The position numbers were made by a program, and so were the translations under genes. From positions 1-26,239 of the forward strand of contig NIVC01005102.1 of NCBI GenBank assembly GCA_002269645.1: a DNA stretch of 26,239 bases. The letters are read 5' to 3'. Positions within the stretch are counted from its first letter, which is position 1. Each line of letters opens with the position of its first letter. The DNA is from Macrostomum lignano. Lineage: Eukaryota. Below the pieces are notes generated by a model. That model worked only from the letters and a program-made list of their open reading frames with translations. It was not told the origin of the DNA and searched no databases. Below are positions 1-22,639 of the stretch, in pieces.

Positions 1-199
1 TCCGGATCTCTAGAGTGCGCGCTCTGGTGTGTTCTCAAAAGTGCCGATTGCCAGGCGGTGGGTCTTCAGCCAGCAGCAGCGCCTGTGCACCTGCTGGAGT
101 TCGCTGCGGTCCCGCCCGGCCCTCAGCAGCGCCAGCAGCGACGACTTCTTTGTCCGTGGCAACAGAGCTGATGCTGGCGCAGTTAAGCGCATTTACTGA
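1..199 (+). CDS. 3' end of a probable small PAN/apple-domain protein, with a 1-nt frameshift at the GGG run 60-62
   Basis: Frame 1 reads SGSLECALWCVLKSADCQAV (1-60). Removing one G continues it in frame 2 as VFSQQQRLCTCWSSLRSRPALSSASSDDFFVRGNRADAGAVKRIY* (TGA 197-199). The joined C-x3-C-x6-C...F...C spacing fits the PAN/apple consensus. Codons are GC3-rich, like the EFR3 exons. Confidence 0.5.
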
Positions 200-964
200 C
201 TCTATGTTATTTCCTTTAATTATTATTTGTTGTTTGGGCGTCTCAGCATAGTTTTCCAACTCAAATTCAAGTCAAACTAATGGCCCCTATTTGATGCCAT
301 ACTCACAGCACAGAGCTATACTTTGTCTCCTGTGCCTCCATCCTGGTCGGCCAGTCCAGACTCTTGCCTCTATCTCAGCCTTTCCCTCTGTCATCTTTAG
401 CTCTTTAGATACTATACATAGCAACCAAATAGAATTCGCTTCTTAGTGTTAATCTAATTGATAAATTTTTGTTATTCTATGCTAACATAATACGTCATTC
501 GGTCTTATCGCACTGTCTGCAGAGATGTGAAAGTAAAAAAACGGAATAAATGATTATGAAAATGTCAATTTGCACCGCGCGTATCTTTAATCGCACAGTA
601 ATAAATGTTTTTCATTTCCACTGGTGCAATAAACGAAAAAATTGTTTTTTTTGGCAAACTTCGAAGTTTGCACTTGCTGCGACAGAATTCGCTGCATGGT
701 AACCTGTGCATTTGACTGAATTGGGTCATCAGCCAAACTGAAGTATGCAGATTTCACCTACACAGAAATAGGAGTCCTTCAAAGCGTTTTACCATCGATA
801 TTTAGTGACAGTGGGAGTGTAATGCTTTAAATCTAATGCGGAAGTGAAAGCCATTTTGTCATAGATTTCATTTGTGCCCACTGTAAGATTTGGCTTCTTA
901 AAAAAGTGCCCTAAGCAGCCTATCCATTTTGTTTACTTCACTCACAAATTCTTAAAATGGTTGT

Positions 965-1470
965 TTTTATTCTTCTTTTACCGTAGCCGTCATGGCCGTA
1001 CGGGCGCAACCACCGCCGACCGGTCTATTTCTTTCAGGGCATCCTCCCGCTGCCTTTTCGGTCTTCTTCACCTTCTTTCACCTTCAACTTTTCTCTTGAA
1101 TGTAGACATTTGCAATGGCTCCCTTCTTTGTAATATTTGAGTTTTTTTCGCTTCATGATTTTCCTCCACAGATTTTGGTTCTTTTCCCTATGCTTTTTAA
1201 ACTTTTCTGCAAACTCAGGAATTTATGTTTTCTCCTTTTCATGAAATCCTTACACTATTCTGTAACATGTCATTTAAAATGCTTTGAGTGTCTCCATACT
1301 TTTCTTCCCAGAGTCCAGCTCTCGAATTCATGCATGTAGTGCGGTATCGCTAATTTGATCGCTTTTGTGATCTTGAGGCGATTCTTCAAACCGACTCCTT
1401 TTTAGTCTCCAAAGTTCATAAAGCTGTTGTGTGCCCTTTCACGGGAACGACGCCTATGCCGTCTTAACCT
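965..1470 (-). mobile_element. Degraded 3' end of an RTE-clade non-LTR retrotransposon
   Basis: Minus-strand peptides across stops and frameshifts: LWRL/KGVGLKNRLKITKAI, ESWTL, LKAF*MTCYR, RIS*KEK, LWRKIMKRKKLKYY, KVEGERR*RRPKRQREDALKE. These follow the order of the RTE post-RT C-terminal region, and the element ends in a short AAAGAAGAA tail. Confidence 0.75.
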
Positions 1471-2035
1471 ATTGGGAAGCTGCGACCTCCAGGTCCCCAG
1501 CCAGAGCACCCGCCAACGGAGGCAGCGGCGGCTGCCCACTCGACAGCAGCTTCATTATGTTTTTAATTTGGCCTACGAGTACATGAATATTAAATAAGGT
1601 AAGAACGAATGTGCGGTACGGTAGGGTGAGGTGCGAGGTGGCGTGATCAGCGTGCGCACTGGTTGAGAAAACTGGAGGGCAGGGGCAGACTGGAAAGTTT
1701 GGGCTGGGCGCGAGAACAAAAAAAGGCACTATTGCACAAGCCTTGTCATTGAGCTGGTTGCAACGCCTATTCCGATTCTGATCTCTTCCTCCTCTGATTC
1801 TGATTCTCCATGATGGTTGCCCCCCCCCCCAGATTGACAGAGTGACGGATCGAGCTGAAACTTTATTTTTGCAGTGTTCTTAGTTGCACATTTTTTTTCC
1901 TGTCCAACGGCGTTCTAAAATATTTTTGCAGAGCAGAGATTTTGTTACTTTTTCGAATATCAATCTGAATATCGATCGGGAAACAAATGCGTGGTATATA
2001 TAGCATTTCCCGGTCAATTTGGTCCTAGAATCACT

Positions 2036-3569
2036 CAATTTAATCCGCAATAGAGAACTCCAATTCATTCCGCCGTCACAAGAGATATGTCTATGACCAA
2101 ATATGCTGTTTTTTTTCAATTTAATCCGCAATAGAGAACTCCAATTCATTCCGCCGTCACAAGAGATATGTCTATGACCAAATATGCTGTTTTTTTTCAA
2201 TTTAATCCGCAATAGAGAACTCCAATTCATTCCGCCGTCACAAGAGATATGTCTATGACCAAATATGCTGTTTTTTTTCAATTTAATCCGCAATAGAGAA
2301 CTCCAATTCATTCCGCCGTCACAAGAGATATGTCTATGACCAAATATGCTGTTTTTTTCAATTTAATCCGCAATAGAGAACTCCAATTCATTCCGCCGTC
2401 ACAAGAGATATGTCTATGACCAAATATGCTGTTTTTTCAATTTAATCCGCAATAGAGAACTCCAATTCATTTCGCCGTCACAAGAGATATGTCTATGACC
2501 AAATATGCTGTTTTTTTCAATTTAATCCGCAATAGAGAACTCCAATTCATTCCGCCGTCACAAGAGATATGTCTATGACCAAATATGCTGTTTTTTTCAA
2601 TTTAATCCGCAATAGAGAACTCCAATTCATTCCGCCGTCACTAGAGATATGTCTATGGCCAAATATGCTGTTTTTTCAATTTAATCCGCAATAGAGAACT
2701 CCAATTCATTCCGCCGTCACTAGAGATATGTCTATGACCAAATATGCTGTTTTTTTTCAATTTAATCCGCAATAGAGAACTCCAATTCATTCCGCCGTCA
2801 CTAGAGATATGTCTATGACCAAATATGCTGTTTTTTCAATTTAATCCGCAATAGAGAACTCCAATTCATTCCGCCGTCACTAGAGATATGTCTATGACCA
2901 AATATGCTGTTTTTTCAATTTAATCCGCAATAGAGAACTCCAATTCATTCCGCCGTCACAAGAGATATGTCTATGACCAAATATGCTGTTTTTTTTCAAT
3001 TTAATCCGCAATAGAGAACTCCAATTCATTCCGCCGTCACTAGAGATATGTCTATGGCCAAATATGCTGTTTTTTCAATTTAATCCGCAATAGAGAACTC
3101 CAATTCATTCCGCCGTCACTAGAGATATGTCTATGACCAAATATGCTGTTTTTTTCAATTTAATCCGCAATAGAGAACTCCAATTCATTCCGCCGTCACT
3201 AGAGATATGTCTATGGCCAAATATGCTGTTTTTTCAATTTAATCCGCAATAGAGAACTCCAATTCATTCCGCCGTCACTAGAGATATGTCTATGACCAAA
3301 TATGCTGTTTTTTTCAATTTAATCCGCAATAGAGAACTCCAATTCATTCCGCCGTCACTAGAGATATGTCTATGGCCAAATATGCTGTTTTTTCAATTTA
3401 ATCCGCAATAGAGAACTCCAATTCATTCCGCCGTCACTAGAGATATGTCTATGACCAAATATGCTGTTTTTTTCAATTTAATCCGCAATAGAGAACTCCA
3501 ATTCATTCCGCCGTCACTAGAGATATGTCTATGACCAAATATGCTGTTTGGTTCCACTCAATTTAATCC
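2036..3569. repeat. Tandem satellite: 19 copies of a ~79-81-bp unit plus a partial copy
   Basis: Unit CAATTTAATCCGCAATAGAGAACTCCAATTCATTCCGCCGTCAC(A/T)AGAGATATGTCTATG(A/G)CCAAATATGCTG followed by a variable T run. Copies start at 2036, 2117, 2198, 2279 ... 3394, 3474, head to tail with no spacers. Confidence 0.97.
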
Positions 3570-4222
3570 TGGGGGCACTTATTTCGCGTATTTATTTTAA
3601 AAGCCGTTATAATAAGCAAGAATGAGTGACTCGGAAAGTAGCGCCAGCTTTGTCATTGCTGACGGAGAAGGAAATCAGGGAAGGAAATTAAAGACCATTA
3701 AAAGCAACCATTTTGGCCATAGAAAATGAAAAGCAAGTTTTTACAAAGTAATAGCTTTATTTCCTTACTAACGATTAAAATCTTTGCTCCGAGGCTCAAT
3801 TTTCTATTTAAAATGCTGTTAAATTTCGCAGACATAGATGGTCGAATCTGCTTTTCTAATTATTGCACTGACGCAAGTTTTATTTTTATTACGTGTCGTA
3901 CTAGGTACTTGCGCTGCTTCTAGAAAGTTCTGCTAGTTTCTATTTCAAGCTTTTTCTTTCGTCATTTTATTCGTTTTTCATTCGGTCTAACCAGGCCTCA
4001 CTATGGTTATCTATTCAAGCCTGCTGTACAGTTTCTTGTATACAGTAGCCTTGCATCTTGAGCTGTACCCACCCAGTGCGAGCCTACGTACCATAAGCAG
4101 ATTGAGATATAGACAAAAACAATATAAATGCATGCATAGCATAGTTACAGAACGAATAGAAAAAATAGAAACCGAAAATAAGAAGACAGCTGAATTTCAT
4201 CTTTGTGCTTTGTAGCCTTACA

Positions 4223-4697
4223 ATGAGTGACAATTTTCCGGAGAGCCTTGACGTCCTGACAGATTTTATCAACGGACTGAATTCCGGAAAATATCGCATT
4301 GCCACGGACGGCCACACTTCACCATTTATAGTGATCGACAATTTCGGGAAGATAATAAACGGAAAATACTACGCAGAATGGGTCTTCCGATTCGATATGC
4401 CGCACAAGGGCTGTAATTACAGTCATTTGAATATTAACAGCAAAATGTTTGGCTTTCCAGATCCGCACACTCCAATACCAGATTGGATGGTTAACAATGG
4501 AAAGATGTTCGGAGAAGGCGCTAAGAAAGCAGGAAAATTATTTTACGTCATTGGATTAGTGGCAGATGCAGTCAATATTGGTAAAAACGTGGTGCAGGAT
4601 TATAGACAGAATGGATTTAAGTCTGCACTTGCTACTGGAATGAAAACCGCCGTTCCAATTGTCGCTACTCGCCTGACTGGTGTAACTGGATCCTCAG
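4223..4697 (+). CDS. Exon 1 of an uncharacterised 199-aa protein (His-motif domain plus amphipathic helices)
   Basis: ATG at 4223, 7 nt after an acceptor-like TTTGTAG (AG at 4214-4215). The frame is open for 475 nt to a consensus donor CAG|GTGAGT at 4698 (phase 1). Contains RFDMPH, HLNIN and DPH motifs. Confidence 0.8.
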
Positions 4698-4934
4698 GTG
4701 AGTGAGACTCAGGAGAGTGATGCAATATATACGAGTGAGTCGTATGAATGCGTTAATTGCTGCTTACCTCTTTTTTATCTTGTCTTGTCGTCTACATACG
4801 AGAGCTACGCGTGCATTTAAAGCTACATTAAATGTACCGTATAGCTATAATTATACATGTATATGCAGAATAAATGTCGCGACTTATAGCAAATCAATAT
4901 TTAGTTACCATGCAATCTTGTCTCCTTTTAACAG

Positions 4935-5059
4935 CTGGGGCAGCAGTTGGCACTTTCATACTACCTGGTGTTGGCACCGTTGTTGGAAGCTATGCTGGCA
5001 CTATTTTGACGACACTAGCCACTGACTTTGGAGTGCACTGGCTCGTAGGCAAACTATGA
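4935..5059 (+). CDS. Exon 2 of the same gene: C-terminal glycine-zipper hydrophobic hairpin
   Basis: Acceptor TCTCCTTTTAACAG|CT at 4934/4935 matches phase 1 (G+CT = Ala). Reads GAAVGTFILPGVGTVVGSYAGTILTTLATDFGVHWLVGKL*. Spliced CDS is 600 nt. Confidence 0.8.
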
Positions 5060-6189
5060 GTAAATTTCTGTTCTGAAGAAAGAAGTTGCTGGATGTAGAC
5101 TGCGATTTAATGTGATGCGATTTGATTTCTGGAATTGATTTACTAGTTTACAGATGCAATACGAGCGTATTTATGTACAGTATGACGTTAATTCCACTTA
5201 AACTGCCCCGTGTCTACCAAAAATTTACCTATGTCTTTTAGACTTCTTAGTTGTGTTTACATGTACCGCACAGTAAGTGCTATTTATATTCCCACAAGTA
5301 GAAATCGATACTTTAGCAATAGAAAATTAACGCAAGCAGGAAACCGGAGGCTAATGAGGGATTGAAATATGAGCAGTGCCGTAGCGTCGGCCTCGATAGA
5401 TTACCTCCAGTCTCATCTGGAACCCTGTGTAAGTGTATAAACTAGAGATTTTGGCCTCTAAAACCCTCAGAATCCGGTTCTGTGGTGGTGCAGGACCGTC
5501 TACGGAAACTGCATGCAGTTCTTACCGGTGGTTGTATTTTGGCTCTAGCATGTACGAGTAACGGTAACTGTCCTTCTTGGGGACTACCCTAGTTCAGTCT
5601 CAGCAAACATGCAGTTTCAACATGCTAGCTGCATCAGACGGCCGCATTAGGTTCCAGCTTCATCGGGCGGTACTTTGCTTCCAGCCGCTTGTAAGCCAGC
5701 ACCGGGCACGCAAAGACTCTTTCTGCCGCTCTCTCCCCTGTACTCCTCCGGTGAAGCTGTACTTCAGTCTGTATACTGATACAGCATATACATGTACCTT
5801 TACGGCTTAGCCCCTTTTTCTTCTCGCTGGATGTGTTAACTCTATTTAGCTATAATATTATTCGAAAGTAAAATGTAATTTGACTGCAGGATTTTTCTTG
5901 ACTATTCTGCATATATCTTTTTAAAATTTATTCTGGCTTTCTTCGTTAAAGTAATTAAAAACTCCCTAGCTGCCTTTGGCAGTAAAAGCATGTGAAAGCT
6001 GGAAGGCTGCAAGAAAGTGTGTGAGGTTTGTTAGGTGTGTATAAGTGTGTAAAGTGTGTCATTGATGTGTGTGAGGTGTGTGTAGTGAGGGAAGATCAGC
6101 AGGGGGAGAGGGGGTCGTCCTGCAGCAACGCCAGAGCTGGTTGGAAACTCTGCAATGAGTCCATATCCATGTGCATCCATGTGAACTGC

Positions 6190-7250
6190 TGTGCATGTCC
6201 ATGACTTCCCGCTCAAGCAGCAGGCCAAGCCTTTAACGCGGCAGGAGGCGGGCTTACGCAGGTTTCAATGATGATTCTGATTGCCACCACCTGCTCTCAG
6301 TAGTTGACCTGTCACTCTGTGAGGCTAGCATGCGCACGTTGAGCACTAGTAGCAGGTAGTTTCGCAGCACGTCGTTCAGAAAATTTTTGAGAGTGCACTT
6401 CGAGGGCGATCCCGCGCTGGCTGATGGAGTTTGTCTTTATTGGGGATGGAGATGATCTTTGAGATCTTCTATACTGCATGGCGGCAGATGTGGACTCGTC
6501 ACCACCAAGACAGCAGTGGCGGTTGAGCAGTCTGATCAAAGAAGATCAGGCAACTTCAGAACTCTCGGTCGGATTCCGTCAACTCCAGACGCAGCGTCAG
6601 GGGGGCAATATAGAAGGATTGGGTGTCAGGCCGGGTGTCAGGCCGGGTGTTAGGCCGGAGGCTGGTGGGAGAAGCAGACGAGGCTCGAGCGCGTTCAACA
6701 CCAGCTAGTAGTGCGAGGCTACCAGCTGCTTTCGATTTTCCTGTGACTTGGCAGCGACGATTGTGTTGGGCTTCTCTCTGCGACCGCTCAGCCTGTTGAT
6801 GGAGCGCTAGCTATGCTGTCAGTTCACAGTCAGTTGCAGGGGCGTCGCCATGGATTTAATGGTGGGGGGACAAAGCCAAGAATTCAATATGTACATGTAC
6901 TAAATTTTGGTACTCATTTTAGTGCCGCAAGCACTCATTTTAGCGCTGCAGGCACTCATTTTAGCGCCACAGACACCCATTTTAGCGCCGAAGGCGCAAT
7001 AATTTGGCGCCATGTATAAAAATTACTGATTACCACAAGGTGGGGTGGTGGGGACAAAGCTTGGCATGTCCCCCGAGAGCTTTTACTGGGGGGGACATGT
7101 CCCCCCTGTCCCCCCCCCGGTGGCGACGCGCCTGGTCAGTTGGATCTCAGCTACCGCCTCTCCGGTTTAGACTTCAGCCTGCTGCTTATGTGCTTATTGG
7201 CTCAGAGCCTGCCTGTAAGATCCTGAGGGTGTTGTTATGACTGAATCATT
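6190..7250 (-). mobile_element. Degraded non-LTR retrotransposon fragment (linker and N-terminal RT motifs), interrupted by a MITE
   Basis: Minus-strand peptides in shifting frames, in canonical RT order: SINRLSGRR, GVDGIRPRVLKLP (~6586-6548), KIISIPNK, QRGIALE, DRSTTE, QVVAIRIIIETC. Multiple stops and frameshifts; outer boundaries approximate. Confidence 0.7.
6837..7134. mobile_element. hAT-type MITE (298 bp) nested in the RT remnant
   Basis: TIRs CAGGGGCGTCGCCA (6837-6850) and TGGCGACGCGCCTG (7121-7134) match at 13/14. Perfect 8-bp TSD GTCAGTTG at 6829-6836 and 7135-7142. Internal 21-bp repeat CACTCATTTTAGCGCC(G/A)CAGG in about 4 degenerate copies (6911-6995). Confidence 0.85.
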
Positions 7251-7789
7251 GTCCCACGTAGAAACACTTTTGGGCTTGCGAGATTCTCGCAGCACAGAAG
7301 CACCAGTTTGGATGGCCATTAAAAAGGCCTCGGGTGAAAAGTTTGCCGGTGCAGCTCATGGCTTGCGATCCCTGCATCCTTACTAGTATTTGACAAAGCT
7401 AATAGAGAAATCCAATTAAAAGTACATATATTATTATTTTAACAGCAAACGTATCATTTATTCATCAACTACACTGTTTGTAGTCACCGATATCGATCTA
7501 TGATCAATGGATCGATGAAGACTGGAAAATAAATTGTTTCAAAACGCTGAGTTATGGAGGCATACGTTATCCCGATTTTTGAGGCAACCATATACATGTC
7601 AGAGCCTCTAAAAAGTTTATGATGAGGACGCACTTTTTTCCAAATCCCGCGCTAGCACATGGGCTCTAAACTTACTTGCCTACTAACAGTGGGCAATGGG
7701 CATTTTTATCCTTTTTCTGCGAATTTTCATAGAATCTATACTAGATATAATGTTTGGTCATACTAGTAGTCATAATAACATAGGTACAG

Positions 7790-7930
7790 CTTTTTGGGTC
7801 ATAAATCATCGCTTTCGAAGCTGGTCTGACAGCCACCTGCGCCTCACTCAGTGTTGAGGCGGGCGCCAGATGGTCTGAGAGGATGCGGGCGGTAGCTTTT
7901 TTCTCATCATTTTGACAGGCCATCAAGATT
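7790..7930 (-). mobile_element. Possible short non-LTR RT remnant
   Basis: KATARILSDHL...LSEAQVAVRP loosely resembles the RT motif K..ARIL..RL...L...Q.GFRP. The match is short and degenerate. Confidence 0.35.
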
Positions 7931-8235
7931 TATGAGGTCAGAGCCTATTGTTCGTGTTCACTCAAGCGTGTGACAGCTTTGACAGCTATGCGTTTTACCC
8001 CTAAAAGTACTTTGGGATTAGCGATTAGCGATTTCTCTTCATTATCTTCACTTTCTATTCAATAAGAGCTTTCTAATGTATATTTTTTCATTAATTTCCG
8101 TCAATCCTACGCGAAAAGTCATAAATCATTTTGTTGCGATTTTGAGTGATTTATGGCCGCACCTGTCATCTTTTTACGACCCTGTGGGAACTGATAGGAT
8201 CTCTCGGTCACGTGATTCTGGGTAGCAACGAGCTT

Positions 8236-8339
8236 AGCCAATCAGAAAATTCGGCGCTCATTTTAACAAAACGGCTCAGCCAATCAGAATCGTCGTGTTC
8301 CATTATAACAAACTGCGGTCCAGTTGGCGGCTATTTAAA
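8236..8339 (+). promoter_or_regulatory. Candidate Pol II promoter: two NF-Y-type CCAAT boxes and a TATA-like element
   Basis: AGCCAATCAG at 8236-8245 and 8278-8287 (42 bp apart), TATTTAAA at 8332-8339, followed by GC-richer sequence. No transcript evidence. Confidence 0.4.
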
Positions 8340-9174
8340 CCGGAGTTTTTGGCCCGCTCGGACTCAACTTTGGCTCGGGCCCAGCGCGCAACTTCTGGTT
8401 CCCGGAGCACGACCGTCGTTTCTTGATCCCCGGATTGCGACTTCCCCCCATCATCATCAAGGACGAGTCCCCTCGGTCATCAGCAGTGAACGTCAAAGGG
8501 AAGAGCATCACCTGCTAGCTATCAGCGAAGAATGTGACATCAGCACCATCCCGGGTCTACAGCTGCGAAGCACTAAGCCGATTCGGTCACTGTGGATTTC
8601 CTGGTCTCCGGCTGTTGAGTTTCTGATTGGTTGGGTGAGAGGCTACCTAGACTTGCTTGATTGGGTGATCCCTTATCTGTCCCCTGTTTCAGTAGCTGGA
8701 TTAGGCGCACACTTTTGCTCATTTTGTTCAGTAGTGCTGTTGCTGAGGCAGAAGTCATTCAATAATACTGCTAGTAGTCTAAACTCCAATTCAATCTGAA
8801 GTGTGAAGTGATCTAAGGAGAAGGTTAAATCTAACAGTTATTGTTATCGGTTTTGTTTCTTTGTTCGCCGGTGGCTCAGATGAGTAGCTAAGCTAGTAGG
8901 CGCCGGTCACAGTGGACCAATGGCAAGGCAGTTCTCAGTCGATCAATCTATCAAATCAATGAGCAAAATTGCCAATGTGCAAATCGGCGCCAGAGATGTA
9001 CTTTGTGCACTCTAGGGTAGCCAAGCGGCTCGGGTAATGAATAATGCGGTCTCTGAAGTTCGAGTTAGTCTATCATCAGCGCTATGAGAGGCTAGTTGGC
9101 GCGTTGAAGGCCAAAAGTACAATTCTTCGTACCAGGTATTTAGCAATGTAATAGTACATGTAGCTACCACATAG

Positions 9175-9305
9175 TCTCGCCACTGCAAGAATCCCCTGCA
9201 CAAGTCCCCTCTGTACCTGCATGGCCAATGCGATCAAGTCCCAGCAGTGTCCCTTATCATCGGCTATGACTTCGAGATAGACAGCAAAAAGACACTAGTT
9301 GGCAG
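9175..9305 (+). other. Candidate orphan coding exon
   Basis: CCACATAG| acceptor-like site, an open GC3-rich frame SRHCKNPLHKSPLYLHGQCDQVPAVSLIIGYDFEIDSKKTLVG, and a perfect donor CAG|GTAAGT at 9306. No partner exons identified and no family recognised. Confidence 0.3.
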
Positions 9306-10114
9306 GTAAGTGCAAAGCCCCTTCTAGTCGGAAGCCCGATTTCGAGAGTCCCGGTGTGGTGAGCCAGGACGCACGGGCTGGTGGCAGCGAGTTAGCTAAT
9401 CTGCGGATTAACTAATTTCTACCTTCAAAATTCTCCCTGCTTGTCTCTCGCTGTCCCTCTCTTAGCTATAGGACCTAGACTGCTCGCCACACGATCAAGC
9501 TACCATGGGGCTGACCATCTGACAGGAGTGGGGGCCAGGTCTCTAATTGATTTATTTCTGAGACCTGTGGCCCGAAGGCTTCCCCACAAGGAGGCCGGAA
9601 GGTCGAAACCCATCATTTAGCGTAATTTAAAAGTGCAGCTGTCATTTTATATGTACATGTAATTAGGATAATTGAATTATTCAATTACGTACAGTGTGCA
9701 AATGTATCTATATCAATGCAGTTAAAATTTAGAGTGCACCATTTATACTGTCAAACTGCATAAATGTCGTTGACTCGTTTACTTTCATGCCACGCATTTA
9801 TATTTAGAGATCAAATTCAGAAACATGTGTTTGTCTAGCATGTAAAAATAATAATAGTAATTGCTACGACTGCTTCGATCAATGGGCAGATGTGCAACTG
9901 AAAGTTCAACCGCAGCTATTGCGCGGCACATCTGTTCGAAGACTGCGAACGGCTGTTCAGTCAAAAAGACTGCATGGGGGTCGCCACACACCTGATCTGC
10001 AATTATACTCATGCCAGCCACTGGCACCATATACGCTCGTATTTTACAACTGGGTGAACTGAAGCAATTCAGAGGATAAGTGTCTTACTCTAGTACTCAA
10101 TTTTTTCCCGAGTG

Positions 10115-10180
10115 GTTCAAAAATCGAACCCCCAACCTTTCACTCTTGATCAGTCCGGAAAATCTAACCACTGGCTAATA
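10115..10180 (-). other. Degenerate tRNA-derived sequence (SINE head or tRNA pseudogene)
   Basis: Minus strand has an A-box-like TAGCCAGTGGTTAG and a B-box-like GGTTCGAT at tRNA-like spacing. I could not fold a complete cloverleaf. Confidence 0.45.
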
Positions 10181-11635
10181 AAACCCCATTGCACGCACAA
10201 TATACATAATTATTACCATTCATTACATGTATTTTCAAATCTGACATATGGCCCTAGCTGTTAGTCTCTAGTATCGTCCTCCCGAGTCGTGACGTGGGAT
10301 TTTGGAATTTTAATTCCGTTCGAATTTTCAGTCTACGCGTTACGCTGCATGTCAGCCCGAATGCGGTGCAATGTTTGTAAAACCCATTTTCTATAGTGGC
10401 ATTGCAAAATTATAAGACGATGTTCGAAAAATCGGCCGACGTCGGATTGCTTTATACTGTAATTAGCGGGTTTTGATTGCTACACTAAATCGTCCACTCT
10501 CGATCGCTTGTCATGCTGCGCCTGCTGCATGCGATTTGAAAGCCTGACTGCGCCTGGATCGACGTGTGCTCAAGGACGACTAATTAAGTAACTCTAAGTC
10601 GTGTGCTCTCCACTTCAGTGCAAGGACTACTAGACTACTATAGACTATCTTCTGGCTGCAGCAGCTTCTTTCGCGGCAGCTAGCACACAGTCTCGGGCGA
10701 TATTCGACTTAATTTGAGTGTCCTTGTCGAGTTCCTGACGAAAGTGTTCTTAGCTTATAGTGTAATTTCCCCCCCCCCCCGGTGCGTCTAACACAACGTT
10801 CCTTACTCAGAGAGAAACAACTGCATCATACAGTATAATGAATACAATTTAAACGGGTTCGTTTCAAACATGCCTGCAGGTCAGATCGACCTGAGATACA
10901 CTGTATGTTGAAGCTGCTGCAGCCTTCGCTCGCAAAAGGCGTAGAGTGTATGATAAGCTATCAGCTCCAAACCAGCTGTTACTATAAAACGTGTGATTGA
11001 AATTATTTAAACTAAGGACGGTACAACAGCAGCATATGGCACGAAAGGCTTTCCATCACCAGAACTACTGCAAAGCAAATTTTAGCTAAAAATCTGGCAT
11101 GATTTCACTTGAGATCAAGTTAAGGTTATAAAATAGAATTTTTATACTGCTTTTTGTTAGTGGCTCTGGTTGCGGATTGAATCGCATGGTGTGTGAAAAC
11201 AGGCTCTCTTTATTATCGAACTGGTGGTACATCATCACGACAATCGTTGATTATTCTAAGAACAAAAATTAAAAAATAATCCTCGGCCAATGTCAATTTT
11301 AATTTTGATCAAGTCAAGTTAAGACAGTGCTAGCTCTGTTGTTGATCAGTTCTCGCTTTTTGGCAAATGTTATTCGCGATTCCTAAATGTCAATGTAGAA
11401 ATTTTTTTCTTAGCTATCACACATTGGCTTTAGAGCGTAGCCTAACATTAACAACAGGAAGTCAATCGATTTAAGAATCAAGAGCCACACGATCACTAAG
11501 TTTAAACTTTATGCACGCTTAGTCTAGGGCCTAGGCAGTTAAATTGTTTTGTCTGTACATTTGAATCTCATCATCCATCACAAGCTGACCAGGATAAAGA
11601 AAGCTTGCTAGTCTAGCCAGTCCTATAATATAAAA

Positions 11636-11642
11636 ATGCCTC
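11636..11642 (+). CDS. EFR3: EFR3 exon 1, coding part (ATG CCT C)
   Basis: AAAAATGCCTC|GTAAGT: good start context and a perfect donor. Phase 1 matches exon 2 (C+GT = Arg), and exons 1+2 total 87 nt (29 codons), ending after NIYPKNYL. Confidence 0.62.
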
Positions 11643-11781
11643 GTAAGTAATTTTTGTGATTAGGATACTATAATAGTAACTTGGCTTTCAAACTTGTACC
11701 TCAAATAAGACCTTGGAATCTTGGATGCAATTTTGCATCATTGCACCAGTGAAAAAACCTAGACTATGTGTTTTTAGGCCT

Positions 11782-13189
11782 TTGACTTACTTGACTTAGC
11801 TGCAGGGCTGTCCTGGAGGGGACACAGCGAGAAGGCGCGGGCACCCATTCCGCTAGTCCCTGAATGGCTGACGCATCGCTATGGACGGAGGGTTGGCGCC
11901 GCCCAGGGAGGTCCCCCAGTGTCGCCAGCAGCTATAGTGCTCTCTGGAAAGGAGAGTTCAGCCCTGCGGGTGGCCCGAAGGTAGTGCATGAGCTGATTAA
12001 AGTTTTCGGGTTTGCACGCATCAGTAATAGATGTGTGTGGCCCGAGGTAAGTGAGTCTGGCCCGCATGAAGGCGGGACAGATGCTGACGAAATGCTCAGC
12101 GGTTTTGTCACCTGAGTTGCAGAAACTACATGTGGCGTTGGTGGCGTTGCCCTGCAGGTACTGGTGCCTGGAGAAGCAGCCATGACCAGAGAGGGTCATG
12201 GTGGCAGCCCGGATGTCTCTGCGCGAGAGGCGCAAGAGGAGCTTCCGGAGCTGGTGAGAGGGCTGAGGGACAGCGCCTCTGGATTGCCTGCAGTTCGTGC
12301 GGTTTGCCCAAGTTGAGCGGTGCTGAGTCCTGATCCACGCTTTGATGCGCGAGTCGATGACACAGCCAGGAATCAGGACAAGGGGTTCGGGACCGAGAGA
12401 GGAGCCGGAGGCACCAACTTTTGCAAGGGTATCAGCCAACTCATTTCCTCGGATCCCCACATGCCCCGGAACCCACTTAATGGTAATTTTGTTGGCAGAA
12501 CCCAACACATTGAGGAGTTTGATACAGTCGAGGACTGTAGCAGAGTTGGTGCTGTAGCCACTGATGGCGTGCAAGGCAGCTTGGCTGTCCGAATGGAAAA
12601 TGATGTTCTTACCAGTAACGCCAGTGGCGAGAAGCTCTGCAGTGCAGGAGCTGATGGCCAGAACTTCATTTTGGAAAACATTGGAGTTGACCCCAGTGTA
12701 TTGAGCGTGGGTAGCGATGACCCTCCCATTCAGAAAGATTCCAACACCAAAGCCGGTGTTGGCTGACTGCTTAGAACTGTCGGTGTAGCAATGAAGCTCA
12801 CCAAGGTTCCATTGGTCATTGATGTTATCGCGCGAGTCAATAGCTACAGAGTAGTGCTGTCTCAGGTTGAGCGTTGAGGCAATGCCATCGGTGAAGACGC
12901 GATTGGCCTGACACTCGTTGAGAAAGTTGAGGCACAGATCGCTATGCGAGACAAGGTTCCGCTTAGCAGGTGCTCTCATGTAAATGAATTTGACGCCGGC
13001 ATCAATTAGACGCCGCGTCGTTCTAGCCGCCTCATCCCTGATCAAGAGGTCAAGAGGCGGAAGATTAAGGAAGGCCCCCATGCCAGCAAAGGGCGTGGAC
13101 CTGGTGGCGTTGCAGATGAGCCTACACGCTCTGCCTTGGATCGTGTTGAGCAGGTCTGCATGGCTTTTGACCTGGATAGCGCTAACCCT
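11782..13189 (-). mobile_element. 5'-truncated LOA/Lian-like non-LTR retrotransposon (post-RT region, RNase H, CCHC knuckle, 3'UTR, repeat tail)
   Basis: LLNTIQGRACRLICNATRSTP...LPPLDL (post-RT). RNase H motifs YTDSSK, VFQNE, HSDSQAAL, WVPGHVGIRGNELADTLAK, then GPEP. Zinc knuckle CSFC-x8-H-x4-C. Stop at 11879-11881; tail (CTAAGTCAA)(GTAAGTCAA) at 11799-11782. Lies antisense in EFR3 intron 1. Clade assignment is by motif recall. Confidence 0.9.
11879..13189 (-). pseudogene. Truncated retrotransposon pol frame: RNase H and zinc knuckle, RT catalytic core missing
   Basis: About 436 uninterrupted codons. The four acidic RNase H residues appear present (G to S in DGS, A to N in QAE). The ORF-track start at 13288 is a TTG in non-retro sequence. 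Confidence 0.8.
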
Positions 13190-13539
13190 GCACCATTTAA
13201 TAGCACATTGGGCCGGATTCCTCTCCTGGCTTCTAAGTGTGGTGGTCTTGGACTTGGTGTGTGGCAGTCTTGGTCCTACACTAGTCAAGATGTTAAATAG
13301 TAATTTTACAATTTAATTTTAACTTTAATTTTAATTTTATAATTTTAACAATTTATAATTATAAATTGTTAATAAATTGTTATAAATTATAATTATAATT
13401 ATAAATTTATAATTATAATTATAACTATTTAACATCTTGACTAGGTAGTATAAGACCAAGACTGCCACACACCAAGTCCAAGACCACCACACTTAGAAGC
13501 TAGGAGAGGAATCTGGCTCAATGTGTTATTAAATGGTGC
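13190..13539. repeat. 350-bp fold-back (long inverted repeat with an AT-rich palindromic spacer)
   Basis: Arms 13190-13301 and 13424-13539 are identical at 106/112 aligned positions, plus one 4-nt indel. The 122-bp spacer is almost pure A/T and contains a perfect 28-bp palindrome TTAACAATTTATAATTATAAATTGTTAA (13345-13372). Confidence 0.93.
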
Positions 13540-14701: not shown

Positions 14702-15957
14702 AATAAAATCATTTAGTTATAAGTCAACTACAAATAATTTTTTCTATTCTATAGCAGATAGTTTGGTATTTTATAAATAGCTATTTATTTTAGTTTTATT
14801 ATTTATTAAATGAATATTGGAGCAAATGTGGTTTTTTTCAGTCGGTATTTAGCATACAAAATTAGACACTAAAAAGTACATATTTAGCTTATACATCTGT
14901 GTGCCTAAGGTTGGATTTAAAAATGATATAGCAATAGTATATATAATAATAAATTACAACAAAATACATCAATCAATTAGTAGACAATATCACAAAGGCC
15001 TAGGTGCGCCACTGGTTATACTGTCGGCAATGTTCGGTATACCAACATCAGCCAGCAGACAGTCAACAAAGTGCCAAGTATGTGCCTGCCCTTGCTAGTA
15101 AGGTGCATGTATCATTAGCAGTAGCAACTCCTGCATTGGCTCTGGGTAGTACAACTTTGTTTAGATGAGATGGCCAGCTAGCTAGAGTTGCTGACTAGAC
15201 TATTTATATTATTATACTAGAAATAGTACACTATAATTTTAAATGCACTATTTTATTCTTTAGAGTTTTTTTAGAAAGCAAACATACTAGCAAAGAAGCA
15301 TGTATAGTCATGCACAGATAATTTTAATACTAGAAATGATTTCTTTTTTATTTTAAGAATGTTGGTAAATAGATAAAAAGGCATTGGTATTGGTAATTGA
15401 TAATTAGTAAGTAAGTGGACAAGAAGCATCAATAAAATGATAAGAAGTGCCAATGAATGGATATAGATTATTGATATTTCCATGGACACACTGTAATCGA
15501 CAATATTAGGAGCTGATTATGATTTAGATATGTGTAAATTTGTTAATGCATTATGGAAAAAGCAAAATTGAGTACTGAAGTGTATTTTCAAAGCTTAAAT
15601 TTTGTAGCTATGTATGCACAAAGACAACAGGATAAGTTTGTTAAAGTAAAAGGCTTCTTTTAATTTATTGATGTTTATGCAAAAATGCAGCCAAAATTTT
15701 AAATGAAAAAATAGTAGCAAAAGAGCATTAAGAATATACAGTTTAGAAAGAATTATAAAATATAAAGTTTCTTAATGCATTCAAACTTGTCCTCCTCCAA
15801 AGAATAGGAAGTCAATCATTGTGATGTTGATATCCTTAGAACTATTTTTGGCAGCACTCCGCAAACTGCCAGACAATATAAATTAAAACCATTAGTGAAT
15901 TCAACAAAATGAGCATCATGCTAAATTTTTTATACACAAAATTTATTGTTGCACCAG

Positions 15958-16037
15958 GTCGCTGCCAGGGCTGCTGTGGCATGTGCAAGCCGCGGTGGGT
16001 TCGGCTTGTGGACAATATCTATCCAAAAAACTATTTG
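15958..16037 (+). CDS. EFR3: EFR3 exon 2 (Cys cluster, RLVDNIYP)
   Basis: GCACCAG| ... TTG|GTGAGA; reads (R)RCQGCCGMCKPRWVRLVDNIYPKNYL. Confidence 0.9.
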
Positions 16038-16135
16038 GTGAGATTCTAAAAATCTAAATGCACCTCTAAGTACTACATGTTACTCAAGTGTCTGACAAAT
16101 TGTCTAAAATTGTTCGCATGATAAAATCTCTGCAG

Positions 16136-16266
16136 AACAAGCAGCCCAATGGGCCGAAGCTCAACTCGCTGACTCATTATTCATGCCGCAACCCTGAGAA
16201 GCTCGCTCGCATTGCCGAGTACCTGGAAAGCCGGCTGCAAAGAGATCTTTATAGGAGAAAGACTGG
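16136..16266 (+). CDS. EFR3: EFR3 exon 3
   Basis: CTCTGCAG| ... GG|GTGAGT; NKQPNGPKLNSLTHYSCRNPEKLARIAEYLESRLQRDLYRRKT(G), containing the PEKL.RI..YL..RL.RD signature. Confidence 0.93.
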
Positions 16267-16349
16267 GTGAGTTGAGATCCGAAAAATCGGCTGTAAAACC
16301 AGTTTACTGTGAGCAGTGAGAAATTTTCCAATCCATTTTTTTATTTTAG

Positions 16350-16476
16350 GCACGTCTTTGTCTCCATGGACATCATTGACAATCTGATCAAGAGCTGCCA
16401 GCGACTGGACAACTTCATCTGCACCTATTTGGCTATGGTCACCAGCTTGTTGGAGAATAAGGATCCCGAGCTGCAG
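16350..16476 (+). CDS. EFR3: EFR3 exon 4
   Basis: TTATTTTAG| ... CAG|GTTTGG; HVFVSMDIIDNLIKSCQRLDNFICTYLAMVTSLLENKDPELQ. Confidence 0.9.
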
Positions 16477-16564
16477 GTTTGGCTTATTGGCTGACTGGAT
16501 TAACTGTATCGTATCCAGACTTAACAGATCCCCAGATTAGGTCTTCAGCGACCTTCTACCCTCT

Positions 16565-18939: not shown

Positions 18940-19221
18940 ATGACGGGCACGCAGAGCTTCGAGAAGTTCTCCGAGATCGACAAGGAGACGCCCAACTACC
19001 TGAAGGAGTACGCCACTCTGCTGGAGTGCTTTGTCAAGATGTGTCACGACGCCAGTCCCGACGAAGCGGTCCGCTGCCGGGTGCGCTGCGCTGGGCTGCA
19101 GGGCATCATGAGCATGATGCGCAAAGTGGCCTCCGATGATTTGCAGATCAACATTTGGGAACAGGTGCACATGAACCAGATCCTCTGGGGCATCTTGTTT
19201 AACCTGGAGGAGGGTTTGCAG
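18940..19221 (+). CDS. EFR3: EFR3 exon 5
   Basis: ATCTCGCAG| ... CAG|GTGAGT; 94 codons, phase 0/0: MTGTQSFEKFSEIDKETPNY...IWEQVHMNQILWGILFNLEEGLQ. Confidence 0.93.
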
Positions 19222-19258
19222 GTGAGTTTTTCGAAAATTCGAGCCTAAGGCAAATCAG

Positions 19259-19546
19259 GGAGTAGAGAGCAGATTCAGTAGGGTAGAGAGCAGATTCAGT
19301 AGGGTAGAGAGCAGATTCAGTAGGGTAGAGAGCAGATTCAGTAGGGTAGAGAGCAGATTCAGTAGGGTAGAGAGCTGATTCAGTAGGGTAGAGAGCAGAT
19401 TCAGTAGGGTAGAGAGTAGATTCAGGGGTGGAGAGCAAATTTAGTAGCGTAGAGAGCAGATTCAGTAGGGTAGAGAGTAGATTCAGGGGTGGAGAGCAAA
19501 TTTAGTAGCGTAGAGAGCAGATTTAGGAGGGTAGAGAGCAGACTCA
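19259..19546. repeat. 21-bp minisatellite, about 13 copies, in EFR3 intron 5
   Basis: Unit AGTAGGGTAGAGAGCAGATTC. A 61-bp three-unit variant block is duplicated (marker at 19414 and 19475). Confidence 0.95.
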
Positions 19547-19574
19547 ATCCGCACTGCAATGCCGCACCCCGCAG

Positions 19575-20081
19575 GCAAGCGAGGAGGCGGCCGCCGCCGC
19601 AGCCCCGACCGCAGCGGCGCCCTCAGTCGGTGGCGACGTGGCGCTGCTGGCCGAGGCGGGTGACGGAGGCGGCTGCGCCTCAGGCAGCGGCCCGCGGCCA
19701 TTCGACAAGGCTAAGGAGGCCCTGGAGGACCTGGTGATGCGAGCCAATTACAACAACATGAACTGCATAGTGGACCCGGTGCTGACCCACCTGGACCACA
19801 ATCCAGACCTGTGGGCGCCCAACCGGTTCGCCGTCTTCGTATTCCACACCATCATCTGCCGCATCCCCAAGCCGTCCCAGGCCTACGCTGTGGTGGACCG
19901 GGTCATCCAGCACCTCAACACGGTCAAGTCCACCCCGGTGAAGAAGGCAGTTGTCCAGGTTGTCAGCAGCATTGTGGGCTACGCTGCCAGCGATGCTATT
20001 GGCCCGGCCGTGTACAATGTGTTCAAGGAGCTGTGCAGGCAGCTCATGCAGAGCATCTGGTCCAGGGATGAGAGCAGCGAT
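19575..20081 (+). CDS. EFR3: EFR3 exon 6
   Basis: CCCCGCAG| ... GAT|GTGAGT; 169 codons, phase 0/0. An Ala/Gly linker, then LEDLVMRANYNNMNCIVDPVLTHLDHNPDLWAPNRFA...IGPAVYNVFKEL. Confidence 0.9.
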
Positions 20082-20133
20082 GTGAGTTTAGGTTGGGTGG
20101 CCACTCTTGGGATAAGTAATCGACTCATTCACT

Positions 20134-20784: not shown

Positions 20785-20832
20785 TCCAAATTTGGAAATG
20801 ACCCCACACGTGACCGCCGCTTGCCACCTCAG

Positions 20833-22201: not shown

Positions 22202-22267
22202 AAAATAGCCCCATTATGCCGTAATGCGAACGCCCCTCAGACTGAGCAGCTTGCTTCAATCCCGCAG

Positions 22268-22519: not shown

Positions 22520-22639
22520 GTCGAAATTTATTCGATTTTTACAGAATATAGCAATCATGCACTTTGTGTGCTACTTATTTAGCTACTGGGCAGTAGAATG
22601 CCTAAACTCTATATATTTAATTCCGCTAAATGCACGCAG

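What the first reader, a model, noticed from the sequence alone, without database searches (positions are those of the whole stretch)
4223..5059. Toxin-like animal gene: three-His R-x-D-x-P-H / H-x-N-x-N / D-P-H domain fused to a glycine zipper
Seen: a two-exon 199-aa CDS containing EWVFRFDMPHKGCNYSHLNINSKMFGFPDPHTPIP, then amphipathic helices and a terminal GSSAGAAVGTFILPGVGTVVGSYAG hydrophobic hairpin. Its codons are visibly richer in A/T endings than the EFR3 exons 5-8 in the same window. Established: GxxxG zippers of this form occur in bacteriocins, pore formers and membrane-inserting segments of bacterial polymorphic toxins, whose small alpha/beta nuclease domains often carry clustered His residues. 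Inference: this may be an uncharacterised animal effector (metal-binding or RNase module plus membrane-insertion module), possibly of horizontal origin and since given an intron. From memory a similar motif occurs in unannotated nematode/arthropod proteins, but I have not verified this.
Basis: partly seen in the sequence, partly recalled or inferred. Interest (0 to 1): 0.72.

Follow-up and report, generated by a model that had tools for sequence, protein, structure and literature searches.

The report
Flatworm gene from bacterial Rhs toxin
A small two-exon gene in this flatworm (Macrostomum lignano-like) sequence is an animal copy of a previously undescribed toxin domain that Bacteroidota bacteria carry at the tips of their Rhs "polymorphic toxins"; related uncharacterised genes occur in nematodes, insects, mites and flukes, so an unstudied bacterial weapon seems to have been adopted by animals.

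Summary
Window 4223-4697 plus 4935-5059 (+) reads as a 199-aa, GT..AG, phase-1 two-exon CDS containing both quoted motifs.

In Bacteroidota (and one myxobacterium) the whole module forms the extreme C-terminus of Rhs/YD-repeat proteins. It is followed directly by a conserved, soluble ~165-aa putative immunity ORF, the standard polymorphic-toxin cassette. The module comprises a beta head with the His motif, amphipathic helices and a glycine zipper.

Animal homologues are all uncharacterised. They occur in Macrostomum, Fasciola, Caenorhabditis (large tandem arrays), Panagrolaimus, mayflies, cockroach, sawfly, a phorid fly and an oribatid mite.

The glycine zipper is not an animal-specific fusion, because the two parts travel together in bacteria too. 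The gene is genuinely animal: it has an intron, lies beside EFR3 in a second locus, and has several paralogues.

Most likely mechanism (inferred): a membrane-inserting, oligomerising toxin module with a metal-binding or catalytic His head. An enzyme-plus-entry-zipper model is nearly as likely. Fold and activity remain unknown.

The parts
4223..4697 (+). Exon 1 (codons 1-158 plus the first base of codon 159)
   Evidence: ORF and donor CAG|GTGAGT. The same junction reproduces deposited paralogue proteins P0001 and P0002.
4698..4934 (+). Intron, 237 nt, GT..AG, phase 1, 36% GC
   Evidence: It is 97.9% identical to the intron of the L001 paralogue. A C. remanei family member has a phase-1 intron one codon away in the alignment.
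4935..5059 (+). Exon 2 (rest of codon 159 to codon 199, stop at 5057-5059)
4271..4372 (+). Residues 17-50: N-terminal beta-strand part of the head. It is homologous to the stretch that follows the Rhs core end in the bacterial toxins (GLN..Y.., I.D; D39 81% conserved).
   Evidence: HMMER matches begin at query residues 17-23 in many bacterial and animal hits. The AF2 model places strands at 24-28, 36-40, 43-45 and 48-50.
4376..4480 (+). Residues 52-86: signature core W53, R56-x-D58-x-P60-H61, H68-x-N70-x-N72, D80-P81-H82
   Evidence: Conservation in 120 domain sequences: R 97%, D 98%, H61 91%, H68 99%, N70 98%, N72 84%, D80 82%, H82 98%. This is the best-predicted part of the model, with pLDDT 73-86 and strands at 55-58 and 68-71. 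dN/dS is 0.19 between paralogues.
4499..4678 (+). Residues 93-152: two long helices, including the hydrophobic/amphipathic helix 103-121. Conserved D115 and D126.
   Evidence: AF2 helices at 93-130 and 132-152. D115 is 88% and D126 92% conserved. The equivalent stretch of three metagenome-derived members of unconfirmed source organism gives sub-threshold Pfam Moricin matches.
4679..5056 (+). Residues 153-199 (interrupted by the intron at 4698-4934): extended glycine zipper / hydrophobic hairpin. G160, G164, P169-G170, G172, G176, G180.
   Evidence: G160 99%, G164 96%, G172 95%, G176 96%, G180 93% conserved. The 47 residues carry only D189 and K198 as charges. Pfam Gly-zipper_Omp is sub-threshold (13.3 bits against a cut-off of 25).

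Best explanation
This is a real, spliced animal gene in a Macrostomum lignano-type flatworm. Its whole product is a domesticated copy of an undescribed C-terminal toxin domain of bacterial Rhs polymorphic toxins.

The module has three parts that travel together from bacteria to animals:
1. A small beta-sheet head that displays a constellation of invariant polar residues: R-x-D-x-P-H on one strand and loop, H-x-N-x-N on the neighbouring strand, then D-P-H.
2. About 60 residues of amphipathic or hydrophobic helix.
3. A C-terminal extended glycine-zipper hairpin.

Most likely mode of action (inferred, not shown): the helices and the zipper insert into a lipid bilayer and self-associate through the GxxxG faces. 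This dissipates the membrane potential or permeabilises the membrane, as shown for the glycine-zipper toxins TelE, EsxX and TspA and for the Rhs-borne pore-former Tse5. The His/Asp/Asn head then sits at the membrane surface as a metal-binding or catalytic site. That site contributes to or gates toxicity, and it is a plausible target of the soluble immunity protein in bacteria.

In the animal the gene has no linked immunity gene, and the Macrostomum copies have no signal peptide. I therefore infer an effector that is held in check or aimed by other means. Candidate roles are antimicrobial defence or controlled membrane damage.
For: Shown:
- The gene model and its paralogues.
- The flank downstream of the gene (window 5654-11776) aligns with locus L002, where an annotated EFR3 gene lies about 9 kb from the paralogue.
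- Family size and motif conservation.
- Bacterial members are the C-termini of Rhs/YD/DUF6443 proteins.
- An annotated Hymenobacter plasmid cassette holds an RHS core-domain protein with an overlapping ORF of the same downstream family, E 1.3e-39.
- Eight of the ten bacterial loci examined have a directly following ORF of one family; the eight align with each other and lack a long hydrophobic stretch by hydropathy.
- No such ORF occurs in the animal loci.
- Animal members occur in flatworms, nematodes, insects and a mite.
- The helices plus zipper make up more than half of the module, and the zipper glycines are 93-99% conserved.
- One hit (P0137) matches only the helix + zipper part and shows no His motif by eye.
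- Sub-threshold Moricin matches fall on the helix: 27.2 bits against a cut-off of 27.6, E 3.4e-6.

From the literature:
- Glycine-zipper toxins depolarise membranes and can be neutralised by soluble cytoplasmic immunity proteins (PMC12744356, PMC10434224).
- Tse5 is an Rhs C-terminal pore former (PMC9637101).
Against: - No activity was measured.
- The eight near-invariant polar residues and the strongest purifying selection (dN/dS 0.19 in the head against about 1.3 in the helices and zipper) point to the head as the critical part. A pure pore former would not predict this.
- The bacterial immunity protein is soluble and has no signal peptide. That is also what enzymatic, cytoplasm-acting Rhs toxins have.
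- Hydrophobicity of the zipper is moderate (maximum KD19 of 1.45).
- The AF2 model is poor for residues 147-199.
- No fold match was found.
Confidence: 0.45

Rival explanations
1. Enzyme plus entry device. The His/Asp/Asn/Arg head is the toxic principle: a small nuclease, RNase or other phosphoesterase with its active site on a beta-sheet face or in a His-Me-finger-like hairpin. The helices and glycine zipper serve only to cross or dock on the target membrane, as the glycine zipper of the Agrobacterium T6SS DNase Tde1 does.
For: - Invariant R56, D58, H68, N70 and H82, with H61, N72 and D80 nearly so.
- The i/i+2 spacing on two predicted neighbouring strands would put them on one face.
- The head is the most constrained part in Macrostomum paralogues, with dN/dS 0.19.
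- The immunity proteins are soluble and lack a signal peptide.
- The Tde1 precedent for nuclease plus glycine zipper (PMC10240207).
- Three of 89 members gave weak Pfam Ntox24 hits (a predicted RNase toxin), best E 0.0098.
Against: - No HNH, EndoVII or other nuclease model is hit by the query or by 89 members.
- The PDB profile search and Foldseek are empty.
- The Ntox24 hits could not be re-found in three further scans.
- The membrane part is over 100 residues, far more than a short entry motif.
- H61 is replaced in several retained copies, for example Caenorhabditis paralogues and the Hymenobacter toxin.
Confidence: 0.35
2. Domesticated and no longer a toxin. In animals the module has become an ordinary membrane-associated protein, for example an organelle or lipid-surface protein anchored by its C-terminal hairpin, with a ligand- or metal-binding head and no killing function.
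For: - Most animal members checked lack a signal peptide. A hydrophobic hairpin ending 2 residues from the C-terminus resembles a tail anchor.
- No immunity gene accompanies the animal genes.
- Some Caenorhabditis members are fused to long amphipathic, apolipoprotein-like repeats.
Against: - All signature residues of the bacterial toxin are retained.
- Tandem arrays are present: at least 9 copies in 21 kb in C. remanei, and 2 copies in L002.
- dN/dS is about 1.3 outside the core. Both features are typical of conflict genes rather than housekeeping genes.
- Some members do carry signal peptides, for example Cloeon and several Caenorhabditis copies.
Confidence: 0.12
3. Not a functional gene: bacterial contamination, a decaying pseudogene, or an over-interpreted ORF.
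For: - Overall dN/dS between paralogues is high, 0.81-1.2.
- One tandem copy in L002 has R56Q and P60A.
- No transcript evidence could be examined.
Against: - There is a canonical intron at the same place in three loci despite different intron lengths.
- The reading frames are intact.
- The core is under purifying selection.
- The downstream flank (window 5654-11776) aligns to locus L002, where an annotated EFR3 gene lies 9 kb from a paralogue.
- The deposited genome annotation has gene models for the paralogues.
Confidence: 0.03

Closest known systems
C-terminal toxin domains of Rhs/YD-repeat polymorphic toxins (Zhang, Aravind et al. 2012, PMC3482391)
   Same: Bacterial homologues sit after the Rhs core end (..DPxGD..). 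They are followed by a small cognate ORF and occur in orphan cassette arrays next to other RHS-CT/immunity pairs. Transfer of such domains to animals has many precedents in that paper.
   Different: This domain has no Pfam or NCBIfam model. A text search of the 2012 catalogue for its motifs found nothing. The window's gene has no Rhs repeats, no trafficking domain and no immunity partner.
Glycine-zipper membrane-depolarising toxins: TelE and EsxX (T7SS LXG), TspA, and the Caulobacter proteins CdzC/CdzD. Also Tse5-CT (Rhs), a pore former for which I did not check a glycine zipper.
   Same: A C-terminal extended GxxxG zipper is required for toxicity in those systems. EsxX and TelE are neutralised by soluble cytoplasmic immunity proteins, and Tse5 is carried by an Rhs protein (PMC12744356, PMC10434224, PMC9637101, PMC5380434).
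   Different: No sequence homology was detected outside the low-complexity zipper. As far as the papers read here describe them, none of those toxins has the R-D-H/H-N-N/D-P-H beta head. The immunity family here is unrelated at Pfam level.
Tde1 (Ntox15 DNase with a glycine zipper needed for translocation), Agrobacterium T6SS
   Same: It combines a polar catalytic domain with a glycine zipper in one antibacterial effector, with a soluble immunity protein (PMC10240207).
   Different: The Tde1 zipper is short and N-terminal. Its catalytic domain is Ntox15 (HxxD), which neither the query nor the family matches.
Moricin (lepidopteran alpha-helical antimicrobial peptide, Pfam PF06451)
   Same: The helix after the D-P-H motif in three metagenome-derived members of unconfirmed source organism aligns to most of the mature peptide: profile positions 28-60 of 62, best 27.2 bits, E 3.4e-6.
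   Different: All matches fall below Pfam's cut-off (27.6). The Macrostomum protein itself does not match. Amphipathic Ala/Gly/Lys helices can converge.
Animal genes domesticated from bacterial toxins (tick dae amidases; insect cdtB and aip56, PMC10120054; teneurin Tox-GHH; aerolysin-like toxins, PMC3424411)
   Same: A bacterial interbacterial or cytotoxic weapon now sits in animal genomes with introns and lineage-specific expansions.
   Different: The toxin family is different. The distribution is broader and apparently older (flatworms + nematodes + insects + mite). Nothing is known about its function in any animal.

Membership tests
Rhs polymorphic-toxin C-terminal domain family (this undescribed family) | Significant sequence homology of the window protein to domains at the extreme C-terminus of Rhs/YD-repeat proteins | tested here: met
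   A profile of the three Macrostomum proteins hits P0021 (1533 aa, match at 1173-1360, E 1e-15), P0118 (2115 aa, match at 1927-2089), P0058 and P0014. These carry DUF6443 or RHS repeats. P0152 is named 'RHS repeat-associated core domain-containing protein'. 14 loci from Bacteroidota and Myxococcota were recovered.
Rhs polymorphic-toxin C-terminal domain family (this undescribed family) | A cognate immunity gene immediately downstream of the toxin in bacteria | tested here: met
   Eight of the ten loci examined have an abutting or overlapping 145-180-aa ORF of one alignable family. The annotated Hymenobacter plasmid has the same arrangement. An immunity function is inferred, not tested.
Rhs polymorphic-toxin C-terminal domain family (this undescribed family) | Growth inhibition or killing on delivery or expression, relieved by the immunity protein | not testable with these tools
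   This needs expression assays.
Glycine-zipper membrane proteins and toxins | Tandem (G/A/S)xxxGxxxG motifs in a hydrophobic segment | tested here: met
   Motif starts at residues 156, 172 and 176 in the C-terminal segment, plus one at residue 135 in the helical region. G160/164/172/176/180 are 93-99% conserved. Pfam Gly-zipper_Omp is only sub-threshold (E 0.079, 13.3 bits against 25).
Glycine-zipper membrane proteins and toxins | Membrane insertion, oligomerisation and depolarisation | not testable with these tools
   Only hydropathy could be computed (maximum KD19 of 1.45). The AF2 confidence for residues 147-199 is below 50.
HNH / His-Me finger (beta-beta-alpha-metal) nucleases | A match to an HNH, EndoVII or Tox-HNH-type profile, or to a beta-beta-alpha-Me structure | tested here: not met
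   No such Pfam family is among those listed for the query or for 89 family members scanned at E<=1. The PDB profile search found nothing relevant. Foldseek against PDB gave a best E of 1.7. The model is of moderate quality, so the fold-level answer stays inconclusive.
Ntox24 (predicted RNase toxin, PF15529) | A match to the Pfam model at or above the gathering score | tested here: not met
   Three of 89 members matched, with a best E of 0.0098. The hits were not recovered in 30 further members scanned. The query has no hit.
Moricin (PF06451) | A match to the Pfam model at or above the gathering score (27.6 bits) | tested here: not met
   The best score is 27.2 bits (P0066), then 23 and 18 bits in two others. 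There is no match for the window protein.
   H61 91%, H68 99%, H82 98% in 120 domain sequences.
   The best model has a mean pLDDT of 54.9, with 73-86 in the core. Coordinates are not exposed, so no distances could be measured.

The most novel reading that the evidence does not exclude
An unrecognised family of bacterial contact-dependent toxins (beta head with an R-D-H/H-N-N/D-P-H site plus a membrane-inserting helix/zipper tail) was captured once by an early protostome. It has been kept for hundreds of millions of years, with an intron at the head/tail-zipper boundary, as a cell-autonomous or secreted membrane-attacking immune or cell-death effector in flatworms, nematodes (C. elegans C13G5.2 family) and arthropods. 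As a further step, the lepidopteran antimicrobial peptide moricin would be a stand-alone remnant of its amphipathic helix.
Probability: 0.15. Interest if true: 0.85.

Novelty: new variant of a known kind. Interest (0 to 1): 0.62.

Why it matters
Polymorphic-toxin domains taken over by animals have repeatedly turned out to be important effectors: deaminases, CIDE nucleases, teneurins, tick Dae amidases and insect CdtB.

Here a whole toxin family appears to be unmodelled in Pfam, NCBIfam and the PDB, and absent from the literature I could search. Yet it has members in two laboratory-friendly animals: Macrostomum lignano, and Caenorhabditis, where NCBI names insect orthologues 'C13G5.2-like'. It also has a clear toxin/immunity cassette in non-pathogenic soil and water Bacteroidota.

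That makes three questions directly testable:
- What does a new interbacterial toxin do?
- Why do animals keep it without its immunity protein?
- Was it inherited from one ancient transfer?

If the helix really is related to moricin, it would also give an origin for an insect antimicrobial peptide family.

Tried and rejected
1. Known-family assignment. Pfam, NCBIfam and PDB sequence searches with the single protein gave nothing significant. A profile of 89 members against the PDB gave only chance hits, IL-6 receptor and TRIM33 at E>0.1.

2. Fold assignment. The first AF2 model used a 3-sequence alignment and was poor, with pLDDT 42.6. The second used 26 sequences and reached 54.9 overall and 73-86 in the core. 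Foldseek against PDB and BFVD found no match with E<0.1. Coordinates are not exposed, so His co-location could not be measured.

3. The word-indexed homology search was swamped by Gly-rich candidates and returned only 18-19 hits per run. Taxonomy therefore rests on 30 cluster look-ups plus names. About 125 of the 275 hits were never seen.

4. Ntox24 lead. Three further scans of 10 members each failed to find the matching members, so I dropped it.

5. HNH / His-Me finger idea. The spacing H61..N70/N72..H82 is compatible, but no profile or structure supports it. It is kept only as part of the enzymatic rival.

6. Codon bias as evidence for recent horizontal transfer. I rejected this, because the paralogues share the low GC3 (0.41-0.43) despite dS of about 0.25, and relatives exist in other phyla.

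7. Contamination. I rejected this because of the intron, the paralogues and the alignment of the downstream flank with the EFR3-bearing locus L002.

8. Literature. Searches for C13G5.2, the Mlig gene ids and five other accessions found no paper.

9. The first genome scan with the broad alignment A3 failed because it had no conserved stretch to search with. It worked with the 10-sequence bacterial alignment A5.

10. The phage collection gave no match.
Full report
1. WHAT IS IN THE SEQUENCE

- An ATG lies at 4223.
- An open frame runs to a canonical donor at 4697|4698 (CAG|GTGAGT).
- A 237-nt AT-rich intron follows, with a polypyrimidine-type acceptor (TTTTAACAG|CT) at 4934|4935.
- A second exon runs to the stop at 5057-5059.
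- The spliced CDS is 600 nt (199 aa), with a phase-1 junction inside codon 159.
- Both quoted peptides are present, at residues 52-86 and 156-180.

The window comes from Macrostomum lignano or a very close relative. The best database matches are two deposited M. lignano hypothetical proteins: P0001 (94% identical, BOX15_Mlig028838g2) and P0002 (69%, BOX15_Mlig019912g1). At both of their loci the same two-exon structure reproduces the deposited protein exactly. The intron is 237 nt in one and 876 nt in the other, in the same phase and at the same alignment column. L002 carries a further tandem copy with a short intron.

An EFR3 gene lies about 9 kb downstream of the L002 copy. The window's downstream flank (5654-11776) is 93-98.7% identical to that L002 region. 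I could not look at RNA-seq, so transcription and splicing are inferred from conservation and from the deposited gene models.

2. THE MOTIF IS A FAMILY SIGNATURE

Pfam, NCBIfam and PDB sequence searches with the protein gave nothing significant. The only result was a sub-threshold glycine-zipper hit.

An exhaustive HMMER search with the three Macrostomum proteins found 275 proteins at E<=1e-3 and 71 at E<=1e-10. Most matched from about residue 20 to about residue 187, so they cover both halves of the protein.

Conservation in an alignment of 120 domain sequences:

| Residue | Conserved |
|---|---|
| R56 | 97% |
| D58 | 98% |
| P60 | 78% |
| H61 | 91% |
| H68 | 99% |
| N70 | 98% |
| N72 | 84% |
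| D80 | 82% |
| P81 | 81% |
| H82 | 98% |
| D115 | 88% |
| D126 | 92% |
| Zipper glycines G160/164/172/176/180 | 93-99% |

D39 is also 81% conserved. The R-x-D and H-x-N-x-N spacings fall on two predicted neighbouring beta strands (55-58 and 68-71). On that reading the residues would share one face of a hairpin, with H61 in the loop. This last point is inference from secondary structure.

3. WHERE THE FAMILY LIVES

Bacteria:
- The long hits are Rhs/YD-repeat proteins with the Bacteroidota-type DUF6443 N-terminus. The domain sits at the very C-terminus, after the ..DPxGD.. core end.
- A genome scan recovered 14 loci. They come from Saprospiraceae, Niabella, Flavobacterium, Apibacter, Prevotella, Cyclobacteriaceae, Cytophagales, Paraflavitalea, Puia and other Bacteroidota, one from Haliangiales, and a weak partial match in an Acetobacteraceae bin.
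- In eight of the ten loci I examined, the toxin ORF is abutted or overlapped by a 145-180-aa ORF. Those eight ORFs align with each other through a conserved ..DG..Y..N.. motif. By hydropathy they have no long hydrophobic stretch, and I saw no signal-peptide-like N-terminus. They have no Pfam match.
- An annotated Hymenobacter plasmid shows the same pair inside an orphan cassette array, next to another RHS-CT plus SMI1/KNR4 immunity pair. Its downstream ORF matches the profile of the other eight at E 1.3e-39.
- This is the standard layout of polymorphic toxin/immunity systems (PMC3482391).

Animals. Cluster look-ups and source names place other members in:
- Caenorhabditis brenneri, C. remanei, C. 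nigoni, C. briggsae, C. tropicalis and C. sp. 36
- Panagrolaimus, Panagrellus and Mesorhabditis
- the mayflies Ephemera, Neocloeon and Cloeon
- Periplaneta americana, the sawfly Athalia rosae and the phorid fly Megaselia
- the oribatid mite Oppiella nova
- the liver fluke Fasciola hepatica

NCBI calls several insect members 'uncharacterized protein C13G5.2-like'. This implies a C. elegans member, but I did not see that protein itself. C. remanei has at least nine copies in 21 kb. None of these proteins has a described function, and no paper in the searchable library mentions them. The 2012 catalogue of polymorphic toxin domains does not contain the motif in a text search.

4. ORIGIN

The window protein is homologous to the bacterial domain over essentially its whole length. 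It is therefore not a His domain newly fused to a zipper in animals. The module was already complete in bacteria.

- A neighbour-joining tree places the ten clearly Rhs-borne sequences on one side of a single branch and the 24 sequences with animal names on the other. Bootstrap support is 74/100. This is a weak test, because most metagenomic members are unlabelled.
- The one C. remanei gene whose splice site I determined (P0170) has a 52-nt phase-1 intron in the codon that aligns next to the Macrostomum intron. Both lie just before the zipper. tblastn exon breaks suggest the same position in at least one other copy of that array.
- Together these results suggest one old acquisition, before the nematode/flatworm split, followed by much loss. 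Independent intron gain at a domain boundary is not excluded.
- The bacteria-to-animal direction is inferred from the cassette context and from precedent.
- GC3 is 0.425 against 0.83 for the downstream exon-like segments. These lie in the region that corresponds to L002's annotated EFR3 gene, but they did not hit Pfam EFR3 models when scanned singly. All three paralogues share the low GC3 despite dS of about 0.25, so it reflects gene class or local composition rather than recent transfer.

5. SELECTION

Between the window copy and the L002 copy, dN/dS is 0.19 in the signature core (residues 51-90). It is 1.3 in the helices and 1.25 in the zipper region, and 0.81 overall. The counts are small. 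The pattern suggests a strongly constrained head with a fast-evolving tail in which the glycines are nevertheless kept. Tandem duplication with fast evolution is typical of conflict genes. This is inference.

6. HOW IT PROBABLY WORKS

Nothing here measures activity, so this section is inference.

The C-terminal 47 residues carry only two charges and contain GxxxGxxxG repeats either side of a P-G turn. They are preceded by about 60 residues of helix that include a hydrophobic stretch at 103-121.

In three metagenome-derived members whose source organism I could not confirm, the helix matches the Pfam model of the membrane-active insect peptide moricin just under threshold: 27.2 bits against 27.6, E 3.4e-6.

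One hit (P0137) matches only the helix + zipper part and shows no His motif by eye.

Several experimentally studied antibacterial toxins with C-terminal glycine zippers (TelE, EsxX, TspA, CdzC/D) depolarise or disrupt membranes. The Rhs-borne Tse5-CT forms membrane pores, though I did not check it for a glycine zipper. EsxX and TelE are held in check by soluble cytoplasmic immunity proteins (PMC12744356, PMC10434224, PMC9637101, PMC5380434). A soluble immunity protein is therefore compatible with a membrane toxin.

My preferred reading (about 0.45) is a membrane-inserting, oligomerising toxin whose polar head is a metal-binding or catalytic site at the membrane surface.

The main rival (about 0.35) is that the head is the enzyme that kills and the zipper only provides entry, as in the DNase Tde1 (PMC10240207). 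The invariance of eight polar residues, the low dN/dS of the head and the soluble immunity protein all favour this rival. Against it are the absence of any nuclease-profile or fold match, the size of the membrane part, and the loss of H61 in some retained copies.

The two models make opposite predictions for His mutants against zipper mutants in a simple E. coli K-12 expression test.

In animals there is no linked immunity gene. The Macrostomum, Fasciola and cockroach proteins lack signal peptides, whereas Cloeon and several Caenorhabditis copies have them. Some Caenorhabditis copies carry long amphipathic, apolipoprotein-like repeats. Both intracellular and secreted uses therefore seem to exist.

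7. VERDICT

It is unproven in its biochemical detail (RNase or metal site), and it is wrong in treating the zipper as an add-on.

The family looks undescribed, so I rate it a new variant of a known kind: a polymorphic-toxin C-terminal domain adopted by animals. It is of real interest to people working on interbacterial toxins and on horizontally acquired animal effectors. The mechanism is open but cheaply testable.

Noticed in passing
P0066 residues 165-197, P0055 residues 201-233, P0143 residues 194-225 (homologous to window residues ~95-125, nt ~4505-4597): The amphipathic helix after the D-P-H motif matches Pfam Moricin (a lepidopteran antimicrobial peptide) over profile positions 28-60 of 62. 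Scores are 27.2, 23 and 18 bits against a cut-off of 27.6, with a best E of 3.4e-6. This could be remote homology or convergence. The window protein itself does not match. The source organisms of these three members are unknown (metagenome/Logan).
   Followed up: partly
window 11777-13412 (ORF 11879-13288, minus strand): A ~1.6-kb insertion relative to the otherwise 98.7%-identical locus L002. It carries a 469-aa ORF with an RNase H domain (E 1.3e-10), probably a retroelement fragment. It lies just after the point that corresponds to the start of the EFR3 gene (about window 11630).
   Followed up: partly
window 2035-3549: A tandem array of 19 copies of a 79-nt unit (97% matches) lies 0.7 kb upstream of the gene. 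It is also present, with a different copy number, upstream of the L001 paralogue. It generates a spurious repetitive ORF on the minus strand (1880-2311).
   Followed up: partly
window 16560-18909 and 20134-20764: Long arrays of a 28-nt unit (83 and 23 copies) in the region corresponding to the EFR3 gene. They are open in all three + frames and produce 250-890-aa repetitive ORFs that are not genes.
   Followed up: no
window 1-4709 versus 5654-11776: The window is a mosaic with respect to the public assembly. Upstream sequence and the gene resemble locus L001 (93-97%), while downstream sequence resembles locus L002 (93-98.7%). L002 has two tandem copies of the gene where the window has one. This is consistent with homeologous or haplotypic rearrangement in this duplicated genome.
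   Followed up: partly
L002 12718-~13400: A tandem second copy of the gene with a short intron and with R56->Q and P60->A in the signature. It may be a decaying or neofunctionalised paralogue.
   Followed up: no
L018 (C. remanei CM021146.1 87493-108371): At least nine family members on both strands within 21 kb. One gene model (14919-17112) joins an apolipoprotein-like amphipathic repeat region (PF01442) to the toxin-like domain. C. brenneri and C. remanei proteins P0008, P0009 and P0013 have similar Ser/Ala-rich repeats at the N-terminus.
   Followed up: partly
P0021 (1533 aa, bacterial Rhs protein) residues 1381-1531: The toxin domain is followed, not preceded, by a Hint/AXH-like domain (AXH E 1.6e-13; PT-HINT E 2e-4). 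This is an unusual order for a polymorphic toxin.
   Followed up: no
window 4223-5059 versus 18955-23223: GC3 is 0.425 in the toxin-like gene and 0.79-0.86 in the five neighbouring exon-like segments. This is a very large within-locus difference in codon usage, shared by the paralogues.
   Followed up: partly
L019 (Hymenobacter plasmid NZ_CP110137.1) 1874-3034: This bacterial member has a degenerate signature (H61->D, N72 lost, D-P-H -> L-H-H) but keeps the helices, the zipper and the immunity partner. This hints that the head residues are not all indispensable.
   Followed up: no
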